The translations under genes and the position numbers were made by a program. Of a DNA stretch of 64,000 nt, positions 1,231 to 54,875 are shown piece by piece (positions within the stretch are counted from its first letter, which is position 1; each line of letters opens with the position of its first letter). The stretch comes from Octopus sinensis (Eukaryota), in the NCBI RefSeq assembly GCF_006345805.1, contig NC_042999.1, positions 27,156,001 through 27,220,000 of the forward strand. Reading direction: 5' to 3'. The notes below the pieces were generated by a model. That model was given only the letters and a program-made list of their open reading frames with translations, made no database searches and had not been told where the DNA came from.

Positions 1231-1894
1231 ATATATATATATATATGCATATGTATGTATCCTCATGACACCATCAAATTCAACATTCTTTTGACATTCA
1301 ATTACCTCGTGTTTAATATTCTGATACAATCAATTTGCTAAATTGCGCGAAAAAAAATGCAATTAGATTCCTGTGGGCATTGAACACGACTGATGTGAAA
1401 ATATCCCCAATACTATAATAAACTACAGATCTGTTCATTATCTAAACATTTCAATCCAATTTGTACATAATATTGCAATCTCTAAAAGCATTATGGTCTT
1501 TCTGGAATATATCCATGTGAATTCGGTTTTAAAAGCGTCAATATTGTCTTTCAAATATTTTCTTTTCGTAAACTAAAGCATAATAACAATCTCATCAGAT
1601 ATGTTTTAACACAATCTTTGTTTATATTAACTTTCTAATTGATTCTTTCTCGGTACTCTCAACAGAGAAATAGAAAATTATAAACTATATCAATGACAAA
1701 TCGCTATTTGATTAATGTTTATTTTTCTCTCTGTCGCAGAAGTGTTTAAATGTAAAACGAAAAGAAATATCAATAGGTGTAGTCACACACACAAATACAA
1801 ACTCAGAAAAACGCTAAATTTTTTGTTAGTACAGTAGAATCAACCTTCAATTTTAGATCTATAGTGATTACTTTTATAATATAGTCTATCAGCA

Positions 1895-2283
1895 AGGCGG
1901 CGAACTGGCGGAAACGTTAGCACGCCGGACGAAATGCTCGGCAGTATTTCGTTTGCCGCTAGGTTCTGAGTTCAAATTCCGCCGAGGTCGACTTTGCCTT
2001 TCATCCTTTCGGGGGTCAATAAAATAAGTACCAGTTACGCACTGGGGTCGATATAATCGACTTAATCTCCTTGTTTGTCCTCTCTGTGTTTAGCCCCTTG
2101 TGGATAGTAAAGAAATAGGTACTTCGTCTGTCTTTACCTTCTGAGTTCAAATTCCGCTGAAGTCGACTTTACGTTTCATCCTTTCGGGGTCGATAAATTA
2201 AGTATCAGTTGCGTCCTGGGATCGATTTAATAGACTGACCCTCTCCCCAAACATTCGAGCCTTGTGTTTAGAGTAGGAAAGAA
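1895..2283 (+). mobile_element. tRNA-derived SINE, dimeric copy (abundant family A)
   Basis: Pol III A-box-like TGGCGGAAACGTTAG and B-box GAGTTCAAATTCC; body GAGGTCGACTTTGCCTTTCATCCTTTCGGGG recurs at 18770, 23511, 46670, 47585 and 54700; two bodies in tandem with different tails. Confidence 0.85.
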
Positions 2284-2714
2284 TATATTCTACCAGTAAC
2301 TCTTGAAAACGCTAACATTTCACAACGAACTTTTATTTTATGAACTCAGTGACTCTGAAAATATCATACAACAGAGCCCAGTGTTCTAAGAAATTTAAAA
2401 TTTAAAAATTGCTTTCAGTTCGTTAGCTATGCATTCAGTAAAAATCTTTTTAACATGATATTTTGAAACAGAATAGTTTTTGGTACGCCAAGACTGATTA
2501 CAAGGGGAAATGATTTCAAAGCTGGAACAACAATTACTTGTATGTCGGGAAAATTATGACAGACCGTTATAATGCATTGCACTTATCATTATTTGCTTTT
2601 ACTCTTTCACACAAACATAGATCCATCTATCTTATCGGCATCTCCCACTCATTATTTTGAAAGAAACAAAAATGTAGTTATCAGAGATCAAGTTACAGAC
2701 TAGATATGTTAGGT

Positions 2715-10333: not shown

Positions 10334-11539
10334 CATAGATATATACATACTTGTGTTCTAGCTGTATGTATGCTTGTCTATGTCTGTGTTTCTACGTGTG
10401 TCTGAGTACACGTGTGTATTCAGATCCAAAGGTATACGCATTATAAATTGGATTTTTTGTAAATCGCTGTATCTTTTTTCTGCAACTTACTGTGTTTATC
10501 ATTATAGCGCTACACCAGTTTGTGAAAGGTTTCATCTCTAACTAGACTCAATGTTTATTGACATTTAAAATTCCTTTGTGTGGATACACGAAGGAATCCA
10601 GATCGGAATATTAACCACAGTGCCACCCCAAACATTACCTCCCCACATAGGTCTACATAGAAATGCAAATGCACTCCCACCCACTAACAAGTATGTGCTA
10701 GTCTCTTTTTGTGTGGATGTGTGTAAGAGAGAGAGTGTGGGGGGTAGAGTGCTGTTTTTGCATGTTTTTGAATGTATGAATGTGTGTTTCAATTCTCGAA
10801 ACAACATCATATTGTTCAGTGTCGGGGCCAGCGTTTAATTGATAACTATGAAACAATAGCTGGTCTTGAAGTGTGACATTTAAGATGTTCTTTATATAAA
10901 TAATTGGAGTTCTAATACAAACAGAAGACAATGAAATTAAAAGATGTAAAGTTTTGTATTGAAATTAACAAATTTCTCAAGTGGATTTTATAACTGTTAA
11001 GTATATCAACTGTTTGCATCTAATTGTAGAAACAGCATGATTTGCAGTTATTGACAGAAAAACCATGAGAAGCTTACTATTTGTTTCCTTTAATGGGGTA
11101 AACTTTTATATTCCTAGTTTTGTTCTTTATATTCCCTTGTTTATTCTGTCAAGCCTTTGTTAACATTACTATCGTTATTTCATTAAAATATAGACGATTT
11201 CCAATGTTTTTTTTGTATTTACGACTTTTCCTTCAATACATTACTTGTCAAATAATCCAAATAACCATAGGGATTGTTTACCAATTGGATATCCAACAGA
11301 TTATTTATTGATTGGAGACTTCTACATTCACAAAAAGTATTTTCCACATTATGTCTATATTATGTCGTTATTCATCTCTTTCTTTTCACTTTCACCAGTT
11401 GAAATCCAACATGTTTTCCGAGTTACACATATCCACTTTCACACCTTAACTTCCAAAACTTTTTTCAAATTACCTTTTGGCTTCATTTTATATCAAGTAT
11501 GGGGGGAATATTTATTAGTCTCTACTTAATAGTAAATAT

Positions 11540-18769: not shown

Positions 18770-18984
18770 TCCACGCAAGCGCGCTGGGCGAAATGCTTAG
18801 CGATATTTCGTCTGTCGTTACGTTCTGAGTTCAAATTCCGCCGAGGTCGACTTTGCCTGTCATCCTTTCGGGGTCGATAAATTAAGTAGCAGTTACGCAC
18901 TGGGGTTGATGTAATCAACTTAATCCCTTTGTCTGTCCTTGTTTGTCCCCTCTATGTTTAGCCCCTTGTGGGCAGGAAAGAAAT
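18770..18984 (+). mobile_element. SINE family A monomer
   Basis: B-box GAGTTCAAATTCC, conserved body, tail GCCCCTTGTGGGCAGGAAAGAAA. Confidence 0.88.
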
Positions 18985-19419
18985 ATATATATTAGCCATA
19001 GTAATTCCATTTCAACGTAGACTATATAACCATGTCCATTCATTTAAGTGTCTTTATAAGGAATGCTGCTTATAGAGATGGTCAATGACAAAATTGATAT
19101 AGAATTTCAAAATTATCAATATAGACTACTCTGTATCTTAGTCCATGATTAGAACAGTTTCCATACATGGGTAGTCAGGTTGAACGCAATTTATGATAAT
19201 TAGAAACATTAGCGACCCTTGGGTGTAAAAACAGTATAATAAACATAATGAATTATTAAACAAATGCCCATCCACACAAATATGTATTTCGCTAGAATTT
19301 CGTTAAACTAGCATTATCTATTGCGGTTTCTATTCATTTTCCATTTTTGCGTGCTCACCTACTCAAGTATTAATCCATAATAAGCATCAATTAACACTCA
19401 CTTTAACTTTTATAAGCGA

Positions 19420-22175: not shown

Positions 22176-23510
22176 TGCTAATCCAATACGAACACGTTAA
22201 TGATTTATAAGAAGCACTCCGATATCTAGAGAAGTCATGTCTGATGGCGTACAAGTAGCTACTGAAACTGACACAGCAGCGGATACTCTTGGATTCCCAA
22301 CAATGAACAGCGGCTGCAGTTTGGTACAATATATCTTTCTGCATACCATCTCTTTGATCGAACACCGAACTAAATCAATCACTAAAAGAGACCGGGTGTT
22401 TAGTATCTAGAATGTTGAAAATTATCCTGGCTTTCATTGCAATCAACTAACTTAATGTCTTTTACTTAAATTGATGTCTTTTACTTCACCTAACCGTCAT
22501 AAATTAGTATTATGTTGTCCCCCCCCCCGTATAAATTAGATTTTCACAGCCAATAAAATTAATCATCGTAATCAGCAACATGTTGACAGGAAGTAGGACG
22601 ATGTTACGAGCAGTGCGGCCTGTTTCATCCAGAAATGGGCTGAAGGGAAGATCTCAATGAATCGAGATGTCATATGCCTGTATCGCATCCTTCATAATCT
22701 ACCGCCTGACAAATATGCAAGACCCCCATCAAACCAAATTAGGGCATCTGCTCTTCCGCGTCTTGTGAAAGAGTTGAGTTTTACAGGTCTATTGATACCG
22801 TCACGTAAAAAACGGAATTAGCATGTCCTTTCTGCCGAGGCAAAGTCTCTGCCAACTCCAAAGATTCCTAGTGTGTTCTCCCGTTCTAACGCTGCTTTCC
22901 CTTAGCTCGACCCGTTGGCGAAGCTGCAGTCTTATGTCAACAATTACCAAAACTGGGTGCCTAGCACCTAGAATGCCACCGAGGCGTTACCACCTTCTAT
23001 CCATCGGCCAATGCGGTCGGTGGAAGTTCCACTTAAGCGGTATAATGAGCTTTAATGGTAGGTAAAGAGATGGCGTCGATGAAGAAGTAAGGATGCATTT
23101 CGAAGGACTTTCGTTATGGTAACTATTTTGTATCGTTTCCAGAAATCGTAGCCCGCTAATGTCACCGAGAAGGACTAGTGGTCTGAGATGAAATCTATGG
23201 TTACGATAGATCAGCTACACGAAAATTTTCGAGACGCGTAGGGTGATGAAACCGCTCATTGCTGACTGAAGGAGTTTTGCAGAACTGCGTGAAGGATGCC
23301 TGTAGGAAAAAGCTGGCTAGAGTTCGAGTTCTATTGTTTTCCTTTAATAAGATTAGTTAGACAGTTTCCCTACATCTGGGGACTATGAGGAAGTCAATCC
23401 CGTGACTATGTAAAGTCAACCTCATTCAGCACCCATTTAGCAAATAAAAGTACACCCATTATCACAATCGTGGTCATCGTCGTTGTTGTTAATATTATTA
23501 ATAAGCCCAC

Positions 23511-24405
23511 TAGCTGGCAGAATGGTTACCAGGCGGCAGGCTGGCAGAAACGTTAGCACGCCGGGCGAAATGCTTAGCGGTGTTTCGTCTGCCGCTACGT
23601 TCTGAGTTCAAATTCTGCCGAGGTCGACTTTGCCTTTCATCCTTTCGGGGTCGATTAAATAAATGCCAGTTACGCACTGGGGTTGATATAATCGACTTTA
23701 TCTGTTTGTCTGTCCTTGTTCGTCCCCTTTGTGTTTAGCCCCTTGTGGGTAGTAAAGAAATAAGTATTTCTTCTGCTTCTACGTTCTGAGTTCAAATTCC
23801 GCCGTGGTCGACTGTGCCTTTCATCCTTTCGAGATCGATTAAAAGTGTACAAGTTACGCTCTGGGGTCGATATAATCGGCTTAATTCGTTTGTCTATCCG
23901 TGTTTGTCCCCTCTGTATGTAGTCCCTCGTGAGCAATAAAGAAATAAGAATGGTTACCATGCCGAACAAGTTGTTTAGCGCCATTTCGTCAGTCTTTACT
24001 TTCTGAGTTCAAATATTCCGCTGAGGTCGACTTTGCCTTTCATCCTTTTGTGGTCGATTAAACAAGTACCAGTTATGCACTGGGGTCGTTATAATTGGCT
24101 TAATCCGTTTGTCTGTCCTTGTTTGTCCCCTCTGTGTGTAGCCCCTCGTGGGCAATACAGAAATAACAATGTTCACCATGCCAAACAAGTTGTTTAGCGG
24201 CATTTCGTCCGTCTTTACGTTCTGAATTCAAGTTCTGCCGAGGTCGACTTTACCTTTCATCATTTCGGAGTTGATGAAATAAGTGCCAGTTACGCACTGG
24301 GGTCGATGAAATAAGTACTAGTTGAGCACTAGAGACGATGTAATCACAAGCCTTCTCCTCTAAAAGTTCAGGTCTTGTACCTATAGCAGAAAGCATTATT
24401 ATTAA
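23511..24405 (+). mobile_element. head-to-tail tetramer of SINE family A
   Basis: Four consecutive bodies each with a GTTCAAAT/GAATTCAAGT B-box; the first three end in GCCCC..GTG..AAAGAAA-type tails (23760, 23944, 24163), the last in GTCTTGTACCTATAGCAGAAAGCATTATTATT. Confidence 0.88.
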
Positions 24406-25239: not shown

Positions 25240-27672
25240 CTTTTTTGTTTCTTCTTTCAAATTTGCTTCCATTTCTTGCCGAGTGTTTCCCGACTCCTAG
25301 GGCAAAGAAACTCATAGTATACATTGGTAGGCCATTAAACCAAACTCAGTAGTTCGTTAATTTAAAAAAAATTTTTTTTTTAAAGTTAAATTAAAATACA
25401 TGAGCAGCAACAGTTCTCACATCGACAATGCTCTTCTCAATACGTGTGATGTACCAGTTAAGACAATCTTTTGCACTTCTTGCAGGGATGGTAAGCCAGG
25501 GATCATTCTCATATAATTTTCGGTTCCCTTCTTGATCATTCCTAGTGCTCCTACGATCACTGGTATTGTAACCGCCTTGAGATGCCACATTTTCTCAATT
25601 TCAATGAGTAGGTCTTTATATTTTCTGAGCTTGTCAAACTCTTTCGCTGAGATATTATGATCACAGGGGATGCTCATGTCGATCAATAAGCAAACTTTAT
25701 TGTTTTGGTCTTTCACAACAATATCTGGTTTATTGGCCTTGATGGTTCGGTCTGTATGTACTGGAAAGTCCCACAGAATGGTTACATTTTCTCCTTCAGT
25801 TACAGCCCCAGGGTGGTGATTATACCACTTGTCGGCAGTTTTGATATTGTAATGCCGACTTATTAGCCAGTGGAGATATTGGCCAACTCTGTCATGTCTT
25901 AATTTATACTCCACTGGTGCTAAGACTTTACATCCAGAGATTAGGTGGTCCACTGTTTCAATCATGTCGTTGCAGAATCGGCATTTTGGGTCTGCTCCAT
26001 TTTTCATTACATTGGCCTGGTAGTTCCGGGTTAATAGGCTTTGATCTTGAGCAGCCAGGATGAAACCTTCGCTCTCTGCTTTTAGCCCTGAGCTCCGTAG
26101 CCACTGATGGGTTTGCTTCTGGTCAACATCAGCTTGTTTGCTGCGGGTCACATATTTGCCGTGCAGAGGTTTCTCCTCCCACCTATCAGCCAATTGCTCG
26201 TGCGCTTTTTTCATTGCCATCATTTTCACCTTCTTTGCAACAATAGTTGCCGTACTTCCCCCGGGTTGTTCAGTTTGGGTATCCTGCACGAAATCAATAG
26301 CACATTTTTTGCTTTCCTTTATGATAGAATGAAGCTTCTTTCGTCTCTCGTGATTTTCCACGAGCTTTAGCATCCAGTCATTCGATATTTCGAGATATTT
26401 GGCCAGTCCAATTGTGGTTGTTTTGTAGACTAGTTCAAATTGGATCAGGCCTCGATCTCCTTGGGCTCTGGGAAGGTAAAGGCGATCTACGTCTGCCTTT
26501 GGGTGGTGCATCCTATTACAACTCAGCAGCTTGCGTATTTTCCTATCTATATTGTTTACTTCACTCATATTCCAGTTCAACACATTGTAGCTATAAGTAA
26601 CAACTGGAACTGCTAAGGAATTTATAGCTAACACCTTGTTACGTGCATTTAGTTCAGATTTCAGGACTGCACGAACTCTCCTATAACATTCCTTCCTGAT
26701 CTTCTCTTTCATGCTTGCATGCTGAATACCAGAGCCTTCATTTATCCTAAATATTTGTATGTTTGTTCTTGCTCAAGCTCTCTTATGACTGTGTCAACAT
26801 CTAACACGACTGAATTTGTGGTCTTCACTTTCCTTTCTGGAAAGTGGCCTTGGCACACTTCTCAAGTCCAAACTCCATCTCGATGTCATCGCTGAATGCT
26901 TTCACGGTGCGCAATAGGCCTTCAAGTTCATTATTGTCTTTACCATAAAGTTTTAAGTCATCCATATAAAATAGATGGCTTATTTTTTTATTGGCAATTT
27001 TATACCCATACCTGTTCTGTTTAATTCACTTGTAAGGGGTATTAGGGCTATGCAGAATATTAAAGGTGAAAGTGAGTCACCTTGAAAAATTCCACAGTTG
27101 ATGTTTATATTTTCTGAGGCAAGTACTCCATTAGAGTGGTTATAATTGGAGATTCGTATCCACAACGACATATTGTGCTTCAGGAAGTTTGAAATCACAG
27201 GGGAAATTTTTAAGATGTCCAGCGATCTCAAGATCCATGGATGCGGTATACTGTCGAAGGCCTTTTTATAGTCAATCCATGCGGTGCTGAGATTTCTGCG
27301 CTTGTTGTGACAGTTCTCAAGGATCATACGATTGATTAGCAGTTGATCTTTGCATCCGTAAGAGCCTCGGCGGCACCCTTTTTGTTCAATGGGGAAAATA
27401 TCGTTCTTCTCCATGAATGCATATGTTTTCTCCGCCAGGATAGATGTTAGGATTTTATACGTGGTGGATAGACAGGTTATAGGCCGATAGTTTTTTGGAA
27501 GGTTGGTTTCGTTATTCTTTGGGAGTAAGTAAGTAATGCCACTTGCTAACCATTCAGGTGTTTTCTTTGGGTCTCTCATAATTCCATTGAGCAGCTGAAC
27601 TAGCTTACCGTGTGCGCATGGGAGCGATGCTAGCCAGAAATTCGGCACCCTATCTTTACCGGGGTATTTCCA
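25240..27672 (-). mobile_element. 5'-truncated R4/Dong-clade non-LTR retrotransposon (RT + CCHC + restriction-like endonuclease)
   Basis: RT motifs YRPITCL, WIDYKKAFDS, GIFQGDSLSPL, YMDD (26957-26968); CRFC..ETVDHLISGC, RHD, KPDIV, LLIDMSIP..KYKDL; 3' UTR 25240-25416; (AAT)n at both ends. Confidence 0.93.
25417..27672 (-). pseudogene. R4/Dong ORF remnant broken by at least three frameshifts (about 27010, 26835, 26750)
   Basis: ORF-track pieces 26980-27858 and 25417-26712 plus an intervening frame carrying KISHLFYMDDLKLYG..FGLEKCAK. Confidence 0.9.
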
Positions 27673-39201: not shown

Positions 39202-39535
39202 TTCAAGGTGGAAAAAAGGATTTCCCGGATTACTTGAGTCTAAGAAAAAATAACTTGTTTGCCGCCTTCGGAATAGTCACCTTGTGCAACTATACACTGG
39301 TCCCATTGTTCCTGCCACTTTTGGAATCCTACCTGGAAGTCTGTCCGAAAGCCAGTCGAGGACCTTCTGCGATTAGGTTTAGATCTTGACAACGGTGTTA
39401 AAACAGTGACATTTGAGCTGCATTTTCACCCTTGGAAAGAGATTTCCAGTGCTAAATCGGGCGAATAAGGCGGGTGTGGAAGCGATACCACGTTGTTTTT
39501 GTCAAGAAACTCATTACTGAGGAGATCTCAGTGAA
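39202..39535 (-). mobile_element. mariner 3' fragment
   Basis: EFLDKNNVVSLPHPPYSPDLA..LFPRVK..FQKWQEQWDQCIVAQGDYSEG; terminus near TA at 39200-39201. Confidence 0.8.
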
Positions 39536-39544
39536 GAATTGTCT

Positions 39545-40232
39545 ACTCCTTATACAGAGTTTGACCACCTCCTGTGCATACACCTTAGCATGGCGTCTGA
39601 TGTGGTTTTTTAAACCAGACAAGGTTCTGAAAAGGGATCCACATAAATTGCACTTCTGATTTAGATAAATTCCGCTTTTTGTGGATCTTAAAATGTTTTT
39701 TGAGGCCTCCGTTGGATTTGCAAACCTTATGGCATACACTGTATTCAAAGGTGTGCACAGACATACAGGCAGAATAGTTGGTGGAGGTTCGTTTTCCATG
39801 CTTTCGCACATGTGATTTGATGTTAGCAAAAGACAGGCATGATCTGTCACAGACTGTGCCCACAAAAAGTTTGTCATTCACCTTCTCGATTGATACATTC
39901 CTCATTAGATCTTTTATGAGTTATCCTGGCTTCTTCAAATGCTTTCAGTCCTCTCCACACCTTTGTTAGCCATCTAACTCGATCCGAAGGAAGGGTTTCT
40001 ATATCTTCTGGAGCCATTCGATGTGACTTCATAGTAGTCCTTATGCTGCCCTTAAGTCTTTTTTTTAGTTTTACAACGATAGCGTTTCCCTTCTGCAAGC
40101 TCACCATAAAACAGTTGTGTCAGCATGCGTTCATCTGCCATTCGAACAATATGACCATACCATCTCAGTTGGTTCCTCAAAATCATAGCTTTAATTGAGG
40201 TGATGCCTGCAGATGTAAGGACATCTGTGTTT
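39545..40232 (-). mobile_element. RTE (BovB-like) LINE 3' end with three C2H2-type zinc fingers
   Basis: SIKAMILRNQLRWYGHIVRMADERM..QLFYGELAEGKR..KKRLKGSI..DRVRW; then VCDRSC..SHVRKH, VCHKVC..KHFKIH, CNLC..NHIRRH. Confidence 0.85.
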
Positions 40233-42205: not shown

Positions 42206-43022
42206 ATATCATTTTTCCCGCCAAAACTATTCGAACTTGGCATCTCATATTTTTTAATTGAACCGCTTAACCGTACAGCTAAGATATTTCAAAATAATTC
42301 GCTTCGTCGTTGAGTTAGTATTTTATGCTTCTGACAGCTATAAAAAAATATTCCGTTACAGATTTTTATCAACCTTATTATTGATACGGAGACTTGCCTT
42401 GTTACATTTACCAGACTGCTATATGTAATATATCCATTAGAATATATTTTCGCGTCAAACTTTTGAGTGCCTGGCAATTTATAAGAGGAATATGAAGAAA
42501 TGTATTTTAACGAAAATATGTGATATATGACATCTTATAATTCCTATATTTTATCTGAAAAATTTCAAAGAAATCAAACGATGAATCCATATTTTCTGTT
42601 CAACTATCGGTGTCGTGATGTTTTATATCAATTTGTCTAGCTCATAAAATAAAACATTGAATAAAGAACGAATCACTTTGGTATATCGAAAGAACACGAA
42701 CATCCTCCACAACTATTAATGTAACCTATTGTCCTGCCTGTCTATGAGGAGAACTTTTGAAAGCTTATCTAAAGTACGGCATGAAATGTGAATTGTGCTA
42801 TTAGAACAAGTTATATGAATTATCCCTACATGACTAGGCACACTAACCACAACCAATTGTAAATATTTGTAAAAACACTCACATACATCGCTGTGTCCAC
42901 ATAAATGTGAAAAAAATACGGGGTGTTCTACTAACGTATTAATATTTAGGAATTACACACACAGAGACACACACACACGGACGCACACACACGGATGCAC
43001 ACACACACACACATATATATGC

Positions 43023-43065
<43 letters not shown>

Positions 43066-44942
43066 ACTCTGCTCAATGCAGACCTGAAAATTTTGACAAA
43101 GGTGTTAGCCAAGAGGTTGGCGCTTGTCATGGAGAAACTGGTCGACAACGCACAAACGTGCGCCGTGCCGGGCCGGAGCATCCATGACAACCTCCATCTG
43201 ATGCGCTACATCATAGACAGGGTAGTTAACGAACCTGGCATGGGTGGGGCCCTGATCAATTTGGATCAATCGAAAGCCTTTGATAGGGTAGACCATCGAT
43301 ACTTGGAGGCAGTCCTGAGAGCGGCTGGTTTCGGTCCCGTCTTCCGCGGCTGGATAGCTGCCTTGTACAGGGGCATCCGTTCGGTAATTCGCGTAAATGG
43401 ACATCTATCGAGACCCTTCGACATTGCACGTTCGGTCCGTCAGGGATGCCCCCTCTCGGCGCTTCTATACGTATTGACTCTTGAGCCACTACTGCGGAAG
43501 CTGGCGACTCTGAGGGGCATCCCGCGAGAATTAGGATGCGGGACGAGCGTGTCTGCATACGCGGACGACGTCACCGTCATAGTGTCAAGCCACGAGCACA
43601 TCGAGCGGGTCGGCGAGACACTGAAAGACTACGAAGCGGTGACAGGAGCAAAAATCAACCGGGAAAAGTCAGTGGGCTTGCGGCTCGGCACCTGGAGAAG
43701 CAAGCCCATGCCGTCCACCAGTACCTCCGTCGTGGGACGCTGGACAGACGGCCCGGTTGAGTTGCTCGGGGTCTGGTTCGGTCCGGACCTCCAAATGGAG
43801 AAGAACTGGAACGAGATAACGAGTAGGGTGGTCACTCTCGCCCAGCAATGGGCCGAGAGGAAACTGTCCCTAAAAGGTCGGGCGGAGGTGGTGAACGCGT
43901 ACATCGCGTCCATCATCTACTACCGCCTGACCGTCGTACCTTGTCCCGACCCTACCATCACCAAACTAGAACGCATCCTCTTCCGCTTCTTGTGGAAAGG
44001 ATGCGTCCCGATGGTCAGGCGATCCATTTGCTGTCAACACCCGTTAAAAGGAGGGCTGGGCATGCCGTGGTTGATGATGCGCAGACACGCGCTGAGACTG
44101 CGACATCTCCGGCTCTATGTAGACGACGGTGAACAGGTGTGGTCGCCGTTTGTGAGGCACGCATTCCCGCAACTCGTCTCCATGACCGAACTACAGTCGT
44201 GGATCAAAAGGAGGCCGAAGAAGGGCGAATGGCACCGCGAGTGTCGCGTTGCTCTCAAGCAACTCTGCCGTCCCGGGTCGGCCTTGAGTGACTTCAACAC
44301 AACCAAAGCATTCTATAGGGGATTAGTGGAGGGGAGGTACGACGACGAGCTCGGGGCAAACCTGGGCGTCGACGAGGAATACCTGACCCGCCTGTTTCAA
44401 ACGACTTTCGGCCCGGGACCTATGGACAACTTCCAGAGATCCCTGGCCTGGCGGTGCTACCGAGAAGCGCTACCCGTTCGGGATAAGCTCTATAGGCATG
44501 GCTCGAGAAACACGGGGCCGACCTGCCCGAGATGCGGGCAGAGCGACGAAACCGCTCTGCACGCAATCGTGCAGTGTCCAGCAATTTCCCACCTGTGGGC
44601 TTATGTCGAACGACTGCTGTCACGTGTGGGACGTGTCGGTTTATCAGCCGAGTCTATCGTTAATATCGTCACGCCTCCTTCCTTCAAACGGGAAGGAAGA
44701 GCTATTTTTATCATACTTGTGGCTATGGCGAAAGAATGTATCTGGTGGACGCGTCTGAAAGGATTAGAGACAAACACTTTCCTCTCTGGTCAATCTCTCA
44801 TCAACTTCTTCAAGTATCACTTGAAGAAAAAGTGAGAGTAGAGAGGCAAGTTTTGTCTAGTGAATGTTTTAAAAAAAGATGGGTGAATGTAGCAAGGATG
44901 GCACGTATGAATGACGAAGCCACCTTGACTATGATTCTATGA
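43066..44942 (+). pseudogene. Tx1 ORF2 remnant (RT to C-terminus), open apart from one frameshift near 44828
   Basis: 580-aa ORF 43093-44835 stops at ..LKKK*, while the adjacent frame continues KVRVERQVLSSECFKKRWVNVARM..MIL* (44942). Confidence 0.85.
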
Positions 44943-45384
44943 ACCGTAAAAATTAATACAGAGAGTTGCTTATTTGCAAAAAAAAAAAAAAGAAATATAA
45001 CATGTGACTTCATTGACCGAGGTTACCGTGGTCTTTTCCGTAGGCTTTTCTTTCCACGGGTAAACCTCACCTGTCCTCCCCTTTACACTTCATATTGACA
45101 TTTCTGTGATAACGATCCCTATTGATCAATTTTTTTTCCTCTCCCCCTTTTTTTTTAACCCCCCCCTTCTTTTTGTCCTCTTTCTCTCCTTTTACGATTC
45201 CTTTTGATCGAACCCCCCTTTTTTATTTTATTTTATTTGTTATTTTATTATTTTTTTTTAATTTTTAATTTTTTTAATTTTTTTAAATTTTTTTATTTTA
45301 ATTTTTTTTTTAAACCTTCAAAAGAAAAGCTCTACCTTGTAATTTGTTCTATCTGTGTGCAGCCCTGTGTGGCTAATAAAGAAA
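43066..45384 (+). mobile_element. 5'-truncated Tx1-group (L1 clade) non-LTR retrotransposon inserted in (ATCT)n
   Basis: RT TLLNADLKIL..LDQSKAFDRVDH..SVRQGCPLS..YADD; CCHC CPRCGQSDETALHAIVQC; about 440-bp pyrimidine-rich 3' UTR ending AATAAAGAAA; (ATCT)n at 43023-43065 and a degenerate copy at 45385-45409. Confidence 0.93.
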
Positions 45385-45394
45385 CATATCTACC

Positions 45395-45428
<34 letters not shown>

Positions 45429-45536
45429 CATATGTGTGTGTGTGTGTGTGTGTGTATAATTTGAGGGAATATTATTCCTAACTTACAGGGAAAAATTCAA
45501 TTTAGAAATACTAAATCAAATTTCATAAGATATAAA

Positions 45537-46669: not shown

Positions 46670-46816
46670 CCGACGTGTTGACTTTGCCTTTAATTCTTAC
46701 GGGGTCGATAAATTAAGAACCAGTGACGCACTGTGGTCGATGAATCGACTTAATCCCTATGTCTGTCCTTGTTTGTCCCCTCTGTGTTTAGCCCCTTGTT
46801 CCGCAATAAAGAAATA
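46670..46816 (+). mobile_element. SINE family A 3' half
   Basis: GTTGACTTTGCCTTT..GGGGTCGATAAATTAAG..GCCCCTTG..CAATAAAGAAATA. Confidence 0.85.
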
Positions 46817-47584
46817 AGAAACTGACGTGTGTGTATGTGTGTGCGTGTGTGATTGGACGTTTATGCGTCACATTTATTTAAACACAGGGATTTCAGCACA
46901 GTAGATACTGGCATTAAACTCAATGAAATCAGTCTGACTAGTTTCAATAGCAGCCCATTTTACTGATCACCAAGAGAATATATCTATCCGTGCGATATTC
47001 AGACTGGAGTGTCAGACTGGGTTAACGAATGTTTTGGAACAGTGTTGGTGTAAATTACAAATCGTCAAAAGCCAGTATTCTGTTTGGGACCAGGAATTTA
47101 ATGAATCGATTTCTGGTGAAGCAAAAATAAATGCTGAAGATTACAAATCTTTTTTTACTACAGATATGAACATCTTGCATAGCATCTACTTTCATGGCGT
47201 CAGCAGAAACGTGTTTTTAATACAATCCCATGATCAGTAATTTGTATTGCTTCTCCGTTTCTTCTAGTATCATGTATTGATTTGATTCATGATTCATGAA
47301 CGTTTCCAACCTTTGCACTGCGATGCAAATAGCGACAGACAAAGCTAGTTTATTTGAGTTTGTGCTTACTATAAATAGCTGCAAACTGCTATATTTTTGT
47401 GTGGTCGGGAAAGTGATAAAGCGTTATTAAATGATGAAACTAGTGACATTGGTCGCATGATGATTATAACGAGGAAAAAGATCTTCCACAGTATCTACTT
47501 TTCACAGTAAGATAAAAAAAAATTGTAAATGCTTCTTATATCTCTGTCTTATGTTGTGTAGTTTTATTGATTATTTGTTATGCA

Positions 47585-48425
47585 CCTAGCTGCCAGAAAC
47601 GTGAGCACACGTTGCAAAATGTTTAGTGACATTTCGTCCACTTTTACGTTCAGAGTTCAAATTCCGCTGATTTCGACTTTGCCTTTCTTCCCTCGGGTTC
47701 GATAAAATAAGTATCGGTTGGACGCTGGGGTAGATTTAATCGTTTTGGCTCTTCCCTTAAGTCTGTTTGCGTTCAGTTAAAATATCTATTGAATGTTAAA
47801 ACTTATAAGTCGGTAAACTGGCAGAATTGTTAGCACGCCGGGCAAAATTCTTCGCGACATTTCGTTGATCTCCTGAGTTCAAATTCCACTGAGGTCGACT
47901 TTGCTTTTCATCCTTTCAGGATTGATAAAATAGGAACCATTTGAGTACTGTAAACGATGTAATCGACTTAACTCTCGATCGAAAATGCTGGCCTTGTGCC
48001 AAAAGTTAAGATCAATATTATGCACCTGGCCATCGCGGCGAGCGGGCCGGATCTTAAACTCACCGGGTAAAATGTCTCACTGCATTACATCCGTAATTAT
48101 GTTCTAAGTTTGAATTCCGCCGAGGTCAGCTTTGCTTTTCATCCTTTCATGGCCAATAAAATAAGTAAGATTTGAACACTTGGGTCAGTTTAATCGACTT
48201 ATATCTCTCCAAAGAATTGCTGACCATGTCAGAAAATTTGAAAGAAATATTATGTATTCAGCGGACAAACCTCTAAGAAGCATTTCTTCGGGATTTTTCG
48301 GTTGTGCGGTCAGATTCCACCGAAATAAATTTTGTATTTCATCCTTTTCGGAGTCGATAAAAAAAAACCCAGTTATGTAACTGAAAACCCTTTGCCTTCA
48401 AATTTGATGGCCTTCTGCCGAAATG
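47585..48425 (+). mobile_element. cluster of four diverged co-oriented SINE family A copies
   Basis: B-box-like motifs at about 47652, 47875, 48105 and 48310, each followed by a TTTCATCCTTT-type body; heads GCCAGAAACGTGAGC and GGCAGAATTGTTAGCACGCCGGGC. Confidence 0.75.
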
Positions 48426-54699: not shown

Positions 54700-54875
54700 C
54701 TTCGAAACATAGGTACAAAGCCTGAAATATTAGAGGAAGGGCTAGTCGATCACATCGAGTCCAGGGCTCAGTTGGTACTTATTTTATGGAACCCGAAAGA
54801 ATGAAAGACAAACTTGAACTCGTTTGAATTTTAACGAAGAAAGAAAAGACAGACGAAATGCTGCTAAGCATTTTA
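54700..54875 (-). mobile_element. SINE family A copy
   Basis: GTTGGTACTTATTTTAT..CCCGAAAGAATGAAAG..CAGACGAAATGCTGCTAAGCATTT, reverse complement of the family A body. Confidence 0.75.

What the first reader, a model, noticed from the sequence alone, without database searches (positions are those of the whole stretch)
45343..45384. The abundant SINE shares its 3' terminal 42 nt with the Tx1 LINE
Seen: the LINE end TTTGTTCTATCTGTGTGCAGCCCTGTGTGGCTAATAAAGAAA aligns without gaps to SINE monomer ends: 34/42 identities with 2074-2115, 32/42 with 24122-24163, 31/42 with 23719-23760, 30/42 with 18942-18983 and 23903-23944. Both terminate at the same AAAGAAA. Known: SINEs borrow LINE 3' ends for stringent recognition, mostly from CR1, L2 and RTE clades, whereas L1-clade mobilisation is usually poly(A)-dependent. 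Inference: this SINE monomer is or was mobilised by a Tx1-group partner with stringent 3' recognition.
Basis: partly seen in the sequence, partly recalled or inferred. Interest (0 to 1): 0.75.

Follow-up and report, generated by a model that had tools for sequence, protein, structure and literature searches.

The report
Octopus SINEs borrow an L1/Tx1-like LINE tail
The last ~45-55 bases of an abundant octopus short repeat (SINE) are the same sequence module that ends a family of L1/Tx1-like LINE retrotransposons in Octopus and Argonauta, so this LINE lineage is the likely engine that copies those SINEs: a textbook kind of parasitism, but with a rarely seen partner clade.

Summary
All five stated identities (34, 32, 31, 30 and 30 of 42) reproduce exactly. 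No other 42-mer in the window exceeds 25/42, and 20,000 shuffles never exceed 25 against an observed 32.

The tail is not peculiar to this LINE copy. Eight LINE copies from the window species, Octopus sinensis, Argonauta hians and three unidentified samples are 46-81% identical in ORF2. All end with the same module: TCTGTGT..GGCC-CTTGT-GGCY-AATAAAGAAAT.

A profile built only from SINE tails finds the LINE tails at E = 1e-11 to 1e-7. In Argonauta, at least two different SINE families carry the Argonauta version of the tail, matching 30 of the last 31 bases.

The LINE has an APE endonuclease, an L1-like reverse transcriptase and zf-RVT. It has no poly(A), and the window copy sits inside a (TATC)n microsatellite. 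That fits Tx1, but no RT tree against Tx1 references could be made.

A small hairpin with an almost unvarying CUUGU loop has modest covariation support.

Verdict: a real SINE/LINE tail pair, and a new member of a known kind. Mobilisation itself is inferred. The closest partner family is probably not the window's (TATC)n-inserted copy.

The parts
43063..45384 (+). 5'-truncated copy of an L1/Tx1-like LINE. The 5' junction is ambiguous within 43063-43066 because of overlap with the microsatellite.
   Evidence: ORF listing, sequence, tblastn with relatives 43039-44939.
43084..44835 (+). ORF2 remnant with a reverse transcriptase and a C-terminal zinc-binding domain. It ends about 35 aa short of its relatives.
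   Evidence: Pfam RVT_1 6.5e-27 and zf-RVT 7e-8. Best solved-structure match is human L1 ORF2p at 2e-25, against R2 at 1e-13. Alignment A1.
44836..45384 (+). LINE 3' UTR, T-rich, with no poly(A) tail.
   Evidence: Sequence.
45335..45385 (+). Shared 3' tail module of about 45-50 nt: CCTTGT..TTTGT..TCTGTGT-GC-AGCC-CTGTGT-GGCT-AATAAAGAAA.
   Evidence: Identities, shuffles, SINE-only profile hit at 45342-45384 with 29.5 bits, alignments A4/A5.
43024..43065 (.). (TCTA)n microsatellite that abuts the LINE 5' junction.
   Evidence: Sequence.
45387..45410 (.). Imperfect (TATC)n immediately 3' of the LINE. It is the other half of the interrupted microsatellite.
   Evidence: Sequence.
1896..2117 (+). 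Full-length SINE with the LINE-like tail ('type A'); the tail is at 2066-2117.
   Evidence: 53.6 bits.
2118..2281 (+). 5'-truncated SINE unit with a different tail ('type B'), fused to the preceding unit. The whole dimer is flanked by an 18-nt target-site duplication (1878-1895 and 2282-2299, 15/18 identical).
18778..18985 (+). 5'-truncated type A SINE.
   Evidence: 54.1 bits.
23531..23762 (+). Full-length type A SINE, the first unit of a head-to-tail array.
   Evidence: 53.5 bits.
23763..23946 (+). 5'-truncated type A SINE, the second unit of the array.
   Evidence: 47 bits.
23947..24165 (+). Type A SINE with a divergent, truncated head; the third unit of the array.
   Evidence: 55 bits.
24166..24400 (+). 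SINE unit with a type B tail, the fourth unit of the array.
46679..46823 (+). 5'-truncated type A SINE with a putative 7-nt target-site duplication, GACGTGT (46672-46678 and 46824-46830).
   Evidence: 46.9 bits. The duplication was read by eye and is not tested against chance.

Best explanation
The window is octopod DNA. It holds a 5'-truncated copy of an APE-type LINE of the L1 group, most likely the Tx1 clade, inserted into a (TATC)n microsatellite.

LINEs of this lineage end, without poly(A), in a conserved 3' module of about 45-55 nt: TCTGTGT, a short GC stem around an almost unvarying CTTGT loop, then AATAAAGAAAT.

One subfamily of the abundant Octopus SINE carries a copy of that module as its own 3' end. 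So do at least two unrelated SINE families in Argonauta.

The proposed mechanism is the classical stringent SINE/LINE partnership. The LINE ORF2 protein recognises this tail on RNA and starts target-primed reverse transcription there. A Pol III SINE transcript bearing the same tail is therefore copied in trans.

Shown here: the homology of the tails, their conservation across the LINE lineage, their presence on several SINE bodies, termination at the same point, and the absence of poly(A).

Inferred: recognition by ORF2p, the role of the hairpin, and the direction of capture (LINE to SINE). The SINE's actual partner is probably a sister family of the window copy that is not microsatellite-bound.
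For: 1. The identity figures are exact and specific.

2. The tail is present at the 3' end of 8 LINE copies:
- window;
- O. sinensis L010 at 11030-11069;
- Argonauta L001, twice;
- Argonauta L011;
- L003, L009 and L012, from unidentified samples.
Their ORF2 identity to the window copy is 46-81%.

3. A profile built from SINE tails alone detects LINE tails at 41.5, 39.9, 33.3, 29.5 and 20.8 bits. Within the window it hits nothing except the 6 SINE tails and the LINE tail.

4. SINE-LINE tail identity is 23-33/41. LINE-LINE identity is 21-33/41, so the two ranges largely coincide.

5. The tails track the lineage. Argonauta SINE tails equal the Argonauta LINE tail (L001 5618-5654) at 30 of the last 31 nt, including the trailing TCTATT. 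Octopus SINE tails differ from it by paired changes in the stem.

6. The same Octopus SINE body occurs with a second, unrelated tail (type B), which shows that tails are exchangeable modules.

7. Hairpin support. In the 4-bp stem, 85% of cells are paired, against 30-46% when the partners are slid. Pair 30:40 occurs as G:C, C:G and A:U. Only 2-5 of 500 shuffles reach the observed values.

8. The LINE is of L1 type:
- APE 47 bits in the Argonauta copy;
- L1 ORF2p is the best solved match, 2.5e-74 against 1e-17 for R2;
- zf-RVT is present.

9. Literature. L1-Tx1 is recently active in O. vulgaris, and most SINEs there are 'unclassified' with no partner named (PMC13282606).
Against: - There is no functional evidence of trans-mobilisation or of RNA binding.
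- RNAalifold predicts no consensus structure for the tails. The lower stem shows almost no covariation. Upper-stem covariation rests on about two independent events.
- The Octopus SINE copies in the window are not in (TATC)n, unlike the window LINE, so target choice does not match this particular LINE family.
- Other LINE clades in the genome could not be screened for the same tail.
- Tx1 membership was not tested by phylogeny.
Confidence: 0.75

Rival explanations
1. Chance or compositional convergence. Both ends are T/G-rich and contain a poly(A)-signal-like AATAAA, so the resemblance would not reflect common descent.
For: The tail contains AATAAA and low-complexity TGT runs. Single-sequence folds are not better than shuffles for most copies.
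Against: - No unrelated 42-mer in 128,000 positions exceeds 25/42, against 30-34 observed.
- None of 20,000 shuffles reaches the observed score.
- The SINE-only profile scores LINE tails from three species at E of 1e-7 to 1e-11.
- In Argonauta SINEs the AATAAA is AATAGA, so a poly(A) signal is not what is conserved.
Confidence: 0.02
2. Reverse direction or nested insertion. The LINE copies end in a fragment of a SINE, either through a short 5'-truncated SINE landing at the LINE end or through an ancestral LINE capturing a SINE tail.
For: SINE units in these genomes often land directly next to other elements. The direction of transfer cannot be read from a pairwise match.
Against: - Eight LINE copies of diverged subfamilies all end in the module at the same place, and none shows an alternative LINE-specific end.
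- The (ATT)n-associated sublineage (L003 and L011) shares about 70 nt of UTR running into the tail, plus its extra A.
- The tail sits on at least 3 unrelated SINE bodies. The Octopus SINE body also exists with another tail, which points to the LINE as the stable carrier.

An ancient capture by the LINE ancestor is not excluded. It would not change the functional reading.
Confidence: 0.07
3. The true autonomous partner of the Octopus SINE is a LINE of another clade that carries the same or a closer tail. The L1/Tx1-like lineage would then be only a second user of the module.
For: - The octopus literature reports active RTE, CR1 and Dong-R4 LINEs, and RTE-2_OV is the element reported as transcribed in octopus brain.
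- The SINE insertion sites differ from that of the window LINE.
- No genome-wide screen could be run.
Against: - The other two LINE fragments in the window (22579-23234 and 26989-27669) show no such tail. The profile finds no further hits in the window.
- The more distant Tx1-like LINEs L007 and L008 lack it.
- Every tail-bearing LINE found belongs to one protein lineage.
Confidence: 0.1
4. The shared module serves something other than RT recognition. Candidates are 3'-end formation or stability of the RNA, or base-pairing of the RNA end with the nicked target.
For: - In Argonauta both SINE and LINE copies are followed by TCTATT. In one case this is part of the target-site duplication (L001 6621, CTATTTCAAGGAA).
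- The window LINE sits in (TATC)n.
- So the sequence around the junction may relate to target choice.
Against: The conserved block is internal (CTTGT loop, GC stem, TCTGTGT), not just the terminal bases. The flanks differ between families ((TATC)n, (ATT)n, none) while the module stays the same.
Confidence: 0.06

Closest known systems
Stringent-type SINE/LINE pairs with a common 3' tail (eel UnaSINE1/UnaL2; zebrafish ZfL2-1/-2; CR1, L2 and RTE/Bov-B pairs)
   Same: The SINE 3' end is homologous to the 3' end of a LINE. Both end at the same point without poly(A). There is a small stem-loop with a conserved loop, like the one ORF2p recognises in ZfL2 (PMC4176376). Several SINE bodies share one tail and one body can carry different tails, as in the mollusc 'jigsaw' SINEs (PMC4758252).
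   Different: The partner here is an L1-group (Tx1-like) LINE, not L2, CR1 or RTE. SINEBase lists LINE-derived modules only for Bov-B, CR1 and two L2 types. No Rfam family, including the UnaL2 3' element, matches the tail. Recognition is untested.
L1-clade LINEs with stringent tails: maize LINE1-1_ZM with ZmSINE2/3, and a green-algal pair (Ohshima 2012, PMC3472496)
   Same: An L1-clade LINE with a conserved, structured 3' end that is shared with SINEs. This is the exception to poly(A)-dependent L1 mobilisation.
   Different: Those cases are in plants and algae. [quoted passage not shown] This one is in an animal and in the Tx1-like branch.
Crocodilian SINEU mobilised by Tx1-Mar (Kojima 2015, PMC4494074)
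   Same: A SINE family attributed to a Tx1-clade partner. The Tx1 families are target-specific, and some target microsatellites.
   Different: That partnership was inferred from a shared insertion target (Mariner-N4_AMi) and shared U1/U2 5' heads. SINEU ends in poly(A), and no shared 3' tail is reported. Here the link is a shared 3' tail, and the SINEs show no strict target.
Microsatellite-specific Tx1 elements Kibi ((TC)n), Koshi ((TTC)n) and crocodilian (TTCC)n/(TTTC)n families
   Same: The window LINE interrupts a (TATC)n microsatellite with repeats on both sides. Two related copies are followed by (ATT)n.
   Different: Different repeat units. Specificity here rests on one two-sided case and two one-sided cases, not on a family-wide count. 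Other related copies (L010, L001a) have no microsatellite flank.

Membership tests
SINE/LINE pair with a shared 3' tail (stringent type) | The SINE 3' end is homologous to the LINE 3' end beyond chance | tested here: met
   30-34/42 ungapped identity. Nothing unrelated scores above 25/42 in the window. No shuffle among 20,000 reaches the observed score. The SINE-only profile hits LINE tails at 20.8-41.5 bits.
SINE/LINE pair with a shared 3' tail (stringent type) | The tail is a property of the LINE family, not of one copy | tested here: met
   Eight LINE copies, from at least 3 identified species, 46-81% identical in ORF2, all end in the module.
SINE/LINE pair with a shared 3' tail (stringent type) | Both elements terminate at the same position and lack poly(A) | tested here: met
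   All end at ..AAAGAAA(T/C), with 0-4 further bases before the flank and no A-run.
SINE/LINE pair with a shared 3' tail (stringent type) | The tail RNA forms a conserved stem-loop | tested here: inconclusive
   In the named 4-bp stem, 85% of cells are paired against 30-46% when slid. Pair 30:40 occurs as GC, CG and AU. But RNAalifold predicts no structure, and the lower stem lacks covariation.
SINE/LINE pair with a shared 3' tail (stringent type) | The LINE protein mobilises the SINE in trans through the tail | not testable with these tools
   This needs a retrotransposition assay or an RNA-binding assay.
Tx1 clade of the L1 group of non-LTR retrotransposons | ORF2 carries an N-terminal APE endonuclease and an L1-type RT with a C-terminal Cys/His domain | tested here: met
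   Exo_endo_phos scores 47 bits in the Argonauta member and in P0022. RVT_1 and zf-RVT are present in the window copy. Human L1 ORF2p is the best solved match, 2.5e-74 over residues 8-857, against 1e-17 for R2. The window copy itself is 5'-truncated and lacks the APE.
Tx1 clade of the L1 group of non-LTR retrotransposons | The RT branches with Tx1 reference elements rather than with L1 proper or other clades | not testable with these tools
   No Tx1, CR1, RTE or other reference sequences were available, and the hits carry no clade names. Indirect support: octopus repeat annotations list L1-Tx1 as the only L1-type LINE class.
Tx1 clade of the L1 group of non-LTR retrotransposons | Sequence-specific insertion | tested here: inconclusive
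   The window copy has (TCTA)n/(TATC)n on both sides. L003 and L011 are followed by (ATT)n. L010 and L001a have no repeat flank. There are too few copies for a family-level count.
Tx1 clade of the L1 group of non-LTR retrotransposons | ORF1 of the RRM/CCHC type | tested here: inconclusive
   One CCHC knuckle in the Argonauta ORF1 scores 17.7 bits, below the 20.8 cut-off. The same is true of the L008 ORF1. This fits the description of Tx1 ORF1 in PMC5203782.
tRNA-derived SINE (SINE2) | tRNA-like head with an internal Pol III promoter | tested here: inconclusive
   Rfam tRNA gives no hit at E<=1 on the Octopus SINE. On the short Argonauta SINE it gives 18-19 bits, below the gathering score of 29. 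B-box-like GAGTTCAAATTCC was seen by eye. The literature classes octopus SINEs as tRNA-Core, tRNA-Deu or unclassified.
tRNA-derived SINE (SINE2) | Short, non-coding, multicopy, with 5' truncations and target-site duplications | tested here: met
   There are 13 SINE hits in the window (14 BLASTN hits including the LINE tail). Several are 5'-truncated. An 18-nt duplication flanks the dimer at 1896-2281. A 13-nt duplication flanks Argonauta L001 6621.

The most novel reading that the evidence does not exclude
An octopod-wide L1/Tx1-like LINE lineage uses stringent, hairpin-based 3' recognition, which is rare in the L1 group. It has been the engine of the large SINE expansions of octopod genomes, and SINE tails have co-evolved with their LINE partners since before the Octopus-Argonauta split. 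The frequent head-to-tail SINE arrays and the single-event dimer would be by-products of this machinery, arising by template switching onto a second tailed RNA or by re-use of a regenerated target.
Probability: 0.35. Interest if true: 0.7.

Novelty: new member of a known kind. Interest (0 to 1): 0.5.

Why it matters
SINEs make up about 8-12% of Octopus genomes and are central to discussions of cephalopod genome evolution. Yet a curated 2026 O. vulgaris annotation still lists 893 of 900 recently active SINE families as unclassified, and none of the papers searched names a LINE partner for them. The one LINE highlighted as active in octopus brain is an RTE.

A shared tail with L1-Tx1-like LINEs names a concrete candidate engine and makes the question testable. 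The tests are tail-swap and loop-mutant retrotransposition assays, and age and target-site comparisons.

It also adds an animal case to the very short list of L1-group LINEs that appear to need a specific 3' end rather than poly(A). That list held 3 of 58 pairs in the 2012 survey. The new case bears on whether stringent recognition is ancestral in the L1 group.

Tried and rejected
No genome-wide consensus sequences, copy numbers, age profiles or target logos could be made.
- A scan of metagenome contigs with the ORF2 alignment returned one unrelated 29%-identity locus.
- Exact-pattern scans for the SINE body in viral and prokaryotic genome collections found nothing.
- P0005 was not on record.
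- L002, L004 and L005 stop before the LINE tail.
- The more distant Tx1-like LINEs L007 and L008 come from a non-octopod assembly and are 46-49% identical. They do not carry the module.
- I suspected that their 3' UTR motif GGCCTTGTG matches the SINE 'type B' tail. Only 1 of 5 type B copies scored above shuffles, so this stays a weak lead.
- RNAalifold gave no consensus structure.
- Rfam gave no match for the tail and no tRNA match for the Octopus SINE head.
- I considered and rejected the idea that the LINE tail is a nested SINE fragment (see rivals).
- I ran no further search on clade naming, because the earlier searches returned almost only unnamed proteins.

Full report
**What is at the coordinates**

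The window is AT-rich animal DNA full of a SINE typical of octopods.

- From about 43063 to 45384 on the + strand lies a 5'-truncated LINE.
- Its open frame (43084-44835) has Pfam RVT_1 (6.5e-27) and zf-RVT (7e-8).
- A 550-nt T-rich 3' UTR follows. It ends at 45384 in ...GTGGCTAATAAAGAAA, with no poly(A).
- The copy interrupts a microsatellite. (TCTA)n at 43024-43065 abuts its 5' junction, and imperfect (TATC)n at 45387-45410 follows its 3' end.

**Checking the observation**

The five stated ungapped identities between the LINE's last 42 nt and the SINE ends (34, 32, 31, 30 and 30 of 42) reproduce exactly. A sixth SINE tail at 46772-46815 matches with one indel.

- Across all ~128,000 positions of both strands, every 42-mer scoring 26 or more is one of these SINE tails or the LINE itself. 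The best unrelated score is 25.
- Against the SINE consensus the LINE scores 32/42. Dinucleotide shuffles give 12.7 ± 3.0 with a maximum of 25 in 20,000.
- BLASTN of a SINE monomer finds the LINE tail unaided, E=6e-4.
- With a small indel the similarity extends to about 50 nt (alignment A2).
- Strictly, both elements run 1-4 nt past AAAGAAA. The SINEs continue with TA(AG). The related LINE copies continue with T, and the window copy with C.

**Is the tail a property of the LINE family?**

I therefore collected relatives of ORF2 from public assemblies and read their 3' ends.

| Copy | Source | ORF2 identity to window | 3' end |
|---|---|---|---|
| L001, near full-length copy | Argonauta hians | 65% | ...TCTGTGTCAGCCAGGTGGCTAAGAAAGAAAT |
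| L001, second copy (5'-truncated, downstream) | Argonauta hians | not given (3' UTR fragment only) | ...TTCTGTGTCGGCCCTTGTGGCTAATAAAGAAATCTATT |
| L011, near full-length copy | Argonauta hians | 58% | ...TCGTCCCCTCTATGTTTTTGCCCTTGTGGCTAATAAAAGAAAT, then (ATT)n |
| L010 | Octopus sinensis | 46% | ...TTGTCCCCCTCTATGTTTGGGCCCTTGTGGCTAATAAAGAAAT |
| L003 | unidentified sample | 72% | ends in the module, then (ATT)n |
| L009 | unidentified sample | 64-67% | degenerate version of the module |
| L012 | unidentified sample | 59% | version of the module, cut by the contig end |

So the module is conserved across a LINE lineage that has diverged to less than 50% protein identity. The hypothesis 'acquired in this copy only' is rejected.

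**Significance at the consensus level**

I built a sequence-only covariance model (R1) from 16 SINE tails, with no LINE sequence in it, and searched 166 kb (window plus 12 loci).

| LINE tail | Score (bits) | E-value (rough calibration) |
|---|---|---|
| L010 | 41.5 | ~1.5e-11 |
| L001 second copy | 39.9 | ~4.7e-11 |
| L011 | 33.3 | ~5e-9 |
| window | 29.5 | ~8.5e-8 |
| L003 | 20.8 | ~4e-5 |
| L012 | 13.0 | 0.011 |

- In the window, the only hits are the six SINE tails and the LINE tail.
- SINE-LINE identity over the 41 aligned tail columns is 23-33. LINE-LINE identity is 21-33, so the two ranges largely overlap.
- BLASTN of the Octopus SINE also finds the LINE tails of O. sinensis (38 nt, 84%) and of Argonauta L011 (57 nt, 81%).

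**More SINE families use the same tail**

In 29 kb of Argonauta sequence, the pattern search lists 14 SINE copies ending in TTCGGCCCTTGTGGCTAATAGAGAAAT(CTATT), and the profile search about 30 tail hits in L011 alone. They sit on at least two different bodies:

- a ~250-nt element whose body is homologous to the Octopus SINE body;
- a ~157-nt tRNA-like element that occurs in head-to-tail arrays.

This tail equals the Argonauta LINE tail (L001 5618-5654) at 30 of the last 31 nt, including the trailing TCTATT. The Octopus SINE tail has its own variant, AGCCCCTTGTGGGC. Conversely, the Octopus SINE body also occurs with an unrelated 'type B' tail, for example at 2237-2281, 24345-24400, 47960-48030 and 54700-54750 on the minus strand.

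Tails are therefore exchangeable modules, and the LINE lineage is their constant carrier. That favours capture from LINE to SINE.

**What kind of LINE is it?**

- The Argonauta L001 copy shows the full anatomy. ORF1 has one weak CCHC knuckle (17.7 bits). ORF2 starts with an APE endonuclease (Exo_endo_phos, 47 bits), followed by the RT and zf-RVT.
- A full-length relative (P0022) matches human L1 ORF2p over residues 8-857 at 2.5e-74, against 1e-17 for R2.
- These features fit the Tx1 branch of the L1 group: no poly(A), a microsatellite insertion with repeats on both sides, and two relatives followed by (ATT)n. Members of that branch are known for target specificity, including microsatellites (PMC4494074).
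- Octopus repeat annotations list L1-Tx1 as the only L1-type LINE class. It has 13 recently active families in O. vulgaris (PMC13282606; PMC8967140).
- I could not place the RT on a tree with Tx1 references. 'Tx1' therefore remains the most likely label, not a tested one.

**A possible recognition structure**

Single-sequence folds repeatedly give a two-tier hairpin. The lower stem pairs UCUGUGU with AUAAAGA. The upper 4-bp GC stem closes an almost unvarying CUUGU loop.

On the 25-sequence alignment A5 the upper stem behaves as follows:

- 85% of cells are paired, against 30-46% with slid partners.
- Only 2-5 of 500 shuffles reach the observed values.
- One pair occurs as G:C (most LINEs and the Argonauta SINEs), C:G (Octopus SINEs) and A:U (LINE L012).

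That amounts to about two independent compensatory events. The lower stem shows almost no covariation, and RNAalifold predicts no consensus structure.

The hairpin is a reasonable candidate for the element that ORF2p recognises, as in the L2-clade ZfL2 elements (PMC4176376). It is not established.

**Which LINE family is the SINE's partner?**

The Octopus SINE copies in the window are not in (TATC)n. One copy has a putative 7-nt target-site duplication. The dimer at 1896-2281 has an 18-nt duplication (15/18 identical), which points to ordinary, largely unspecific integration.

The O. sinensis family (L010) has no microsatellite flank. It matches the SINE tail at least as well as the window copy does: 32 against 30 of 41 columns, and 41.5 against 29.5 bits. 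The lineage is the candidate partner, not this particular (TATC)n-inserted family.

**Comparison with what is known**

SINE/LINE tail sharing is textbook, but the described partners are overwhelmingly L2, CR1 and RTE/Bov-B (SINEBase).

- The one described Tx1-SINE partnership is crocodilian SINEU with Tx1-Mar. It rests on shared targets and 5' heads, and SINEU ends in poly(A).
- I found no open paper that names a LINE partner for the octopus SINEs. I could not consult Repbase or Dfam, which may already record it.

I therefore rate this as a new member of a known kind, of moderate interest.

Noticed in passing
window 2237-2281, 24345-24400, 47960-48030, 48190-48260; 54700-54750 (minus strand): The same SINE body occurs with a second, unrelated 3' tail ('type B': ..CCCTTCCCC.AAAATTTCAGGCCTTGTGCCTATAGTAGAAAG.ATTATT). 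One of five copies resembles the 3' UTR of a more distant Tx1-like LINE (L007 12690-12720). The other four do not exceed shuffles.
   Followed up: partly
window 1878-2299: A full type A SINE (1896-2117) is fused to a 5'-truncated type B unit (2118-2281). The pair is flanked as a whole by an 18-nt target-site duplication (aatataKtctaYcagYaa, 15/18 identical). So the dimer arrived in one integration event, either by template switching between two SINE RNAs or from a dimeric master copy.
   Followed up: partly
window 23515-24400; L011 4995-5361 and 13817-14023: Tailed SINE units often lie head to tail with 0-3 nt between them. In the window, 4 of 6 type A tails abut another unit. Two junctions start the next unit at the same SINE position (GGTAYTTCKTCTG). 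In Argonauta, three 157-nt units are separated by TCTATTT. This suggests re-use of a regenerated target or template switching.
   Followed up: partly
L001 6570-6670 (minus strand); L011 15100-15260: In Argonauta most SINE and LINE tails are followed by TCTATT. In one copy this is part of a 13-nt target-site duplication (CTATTTCAAGGAA). That hints at a target preference resembling the (TCTA)n unit in which the window LINE sits.
   Followed up: partly
window 42940-43065 and 45385-45450: The LINE sits in a compound microsatellite with mirror-like order: (CA)n (TA)n (TCTA)n | LINE | (TATC)n (TA)n (TG)n.
   Followed up: no
window 44800-44835: The window LINE's ORF2 stops at ...HLKKK, about 35 residues before the end seen in all relatives (alignment A1). 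The copy is degenerate as well as 5'-truncated.
   Followed up: no
window 22579-23234 (+) and 26989-27669 (-): Two further decayed LINE RT fragments, 29-31% identical to the Tx1-like proteins. The first lies just upstream of the SINE array. Neither has the tail module.
   Followed up: no
window 39452-39920 (minus strand): Two overlapping open frames carry C2H2 zinc-finger-like motifs (for example CNLCGSLFRTLSGLKNHIRRH). They may be a fragment of one of the expanded octopus zinc-finger genes.
   Followed up: no
L011 5361-5600: The near full-length Argonauta LINE begins directly downstream of a three-unit SINE array in the same orientation.
   Followed up: no
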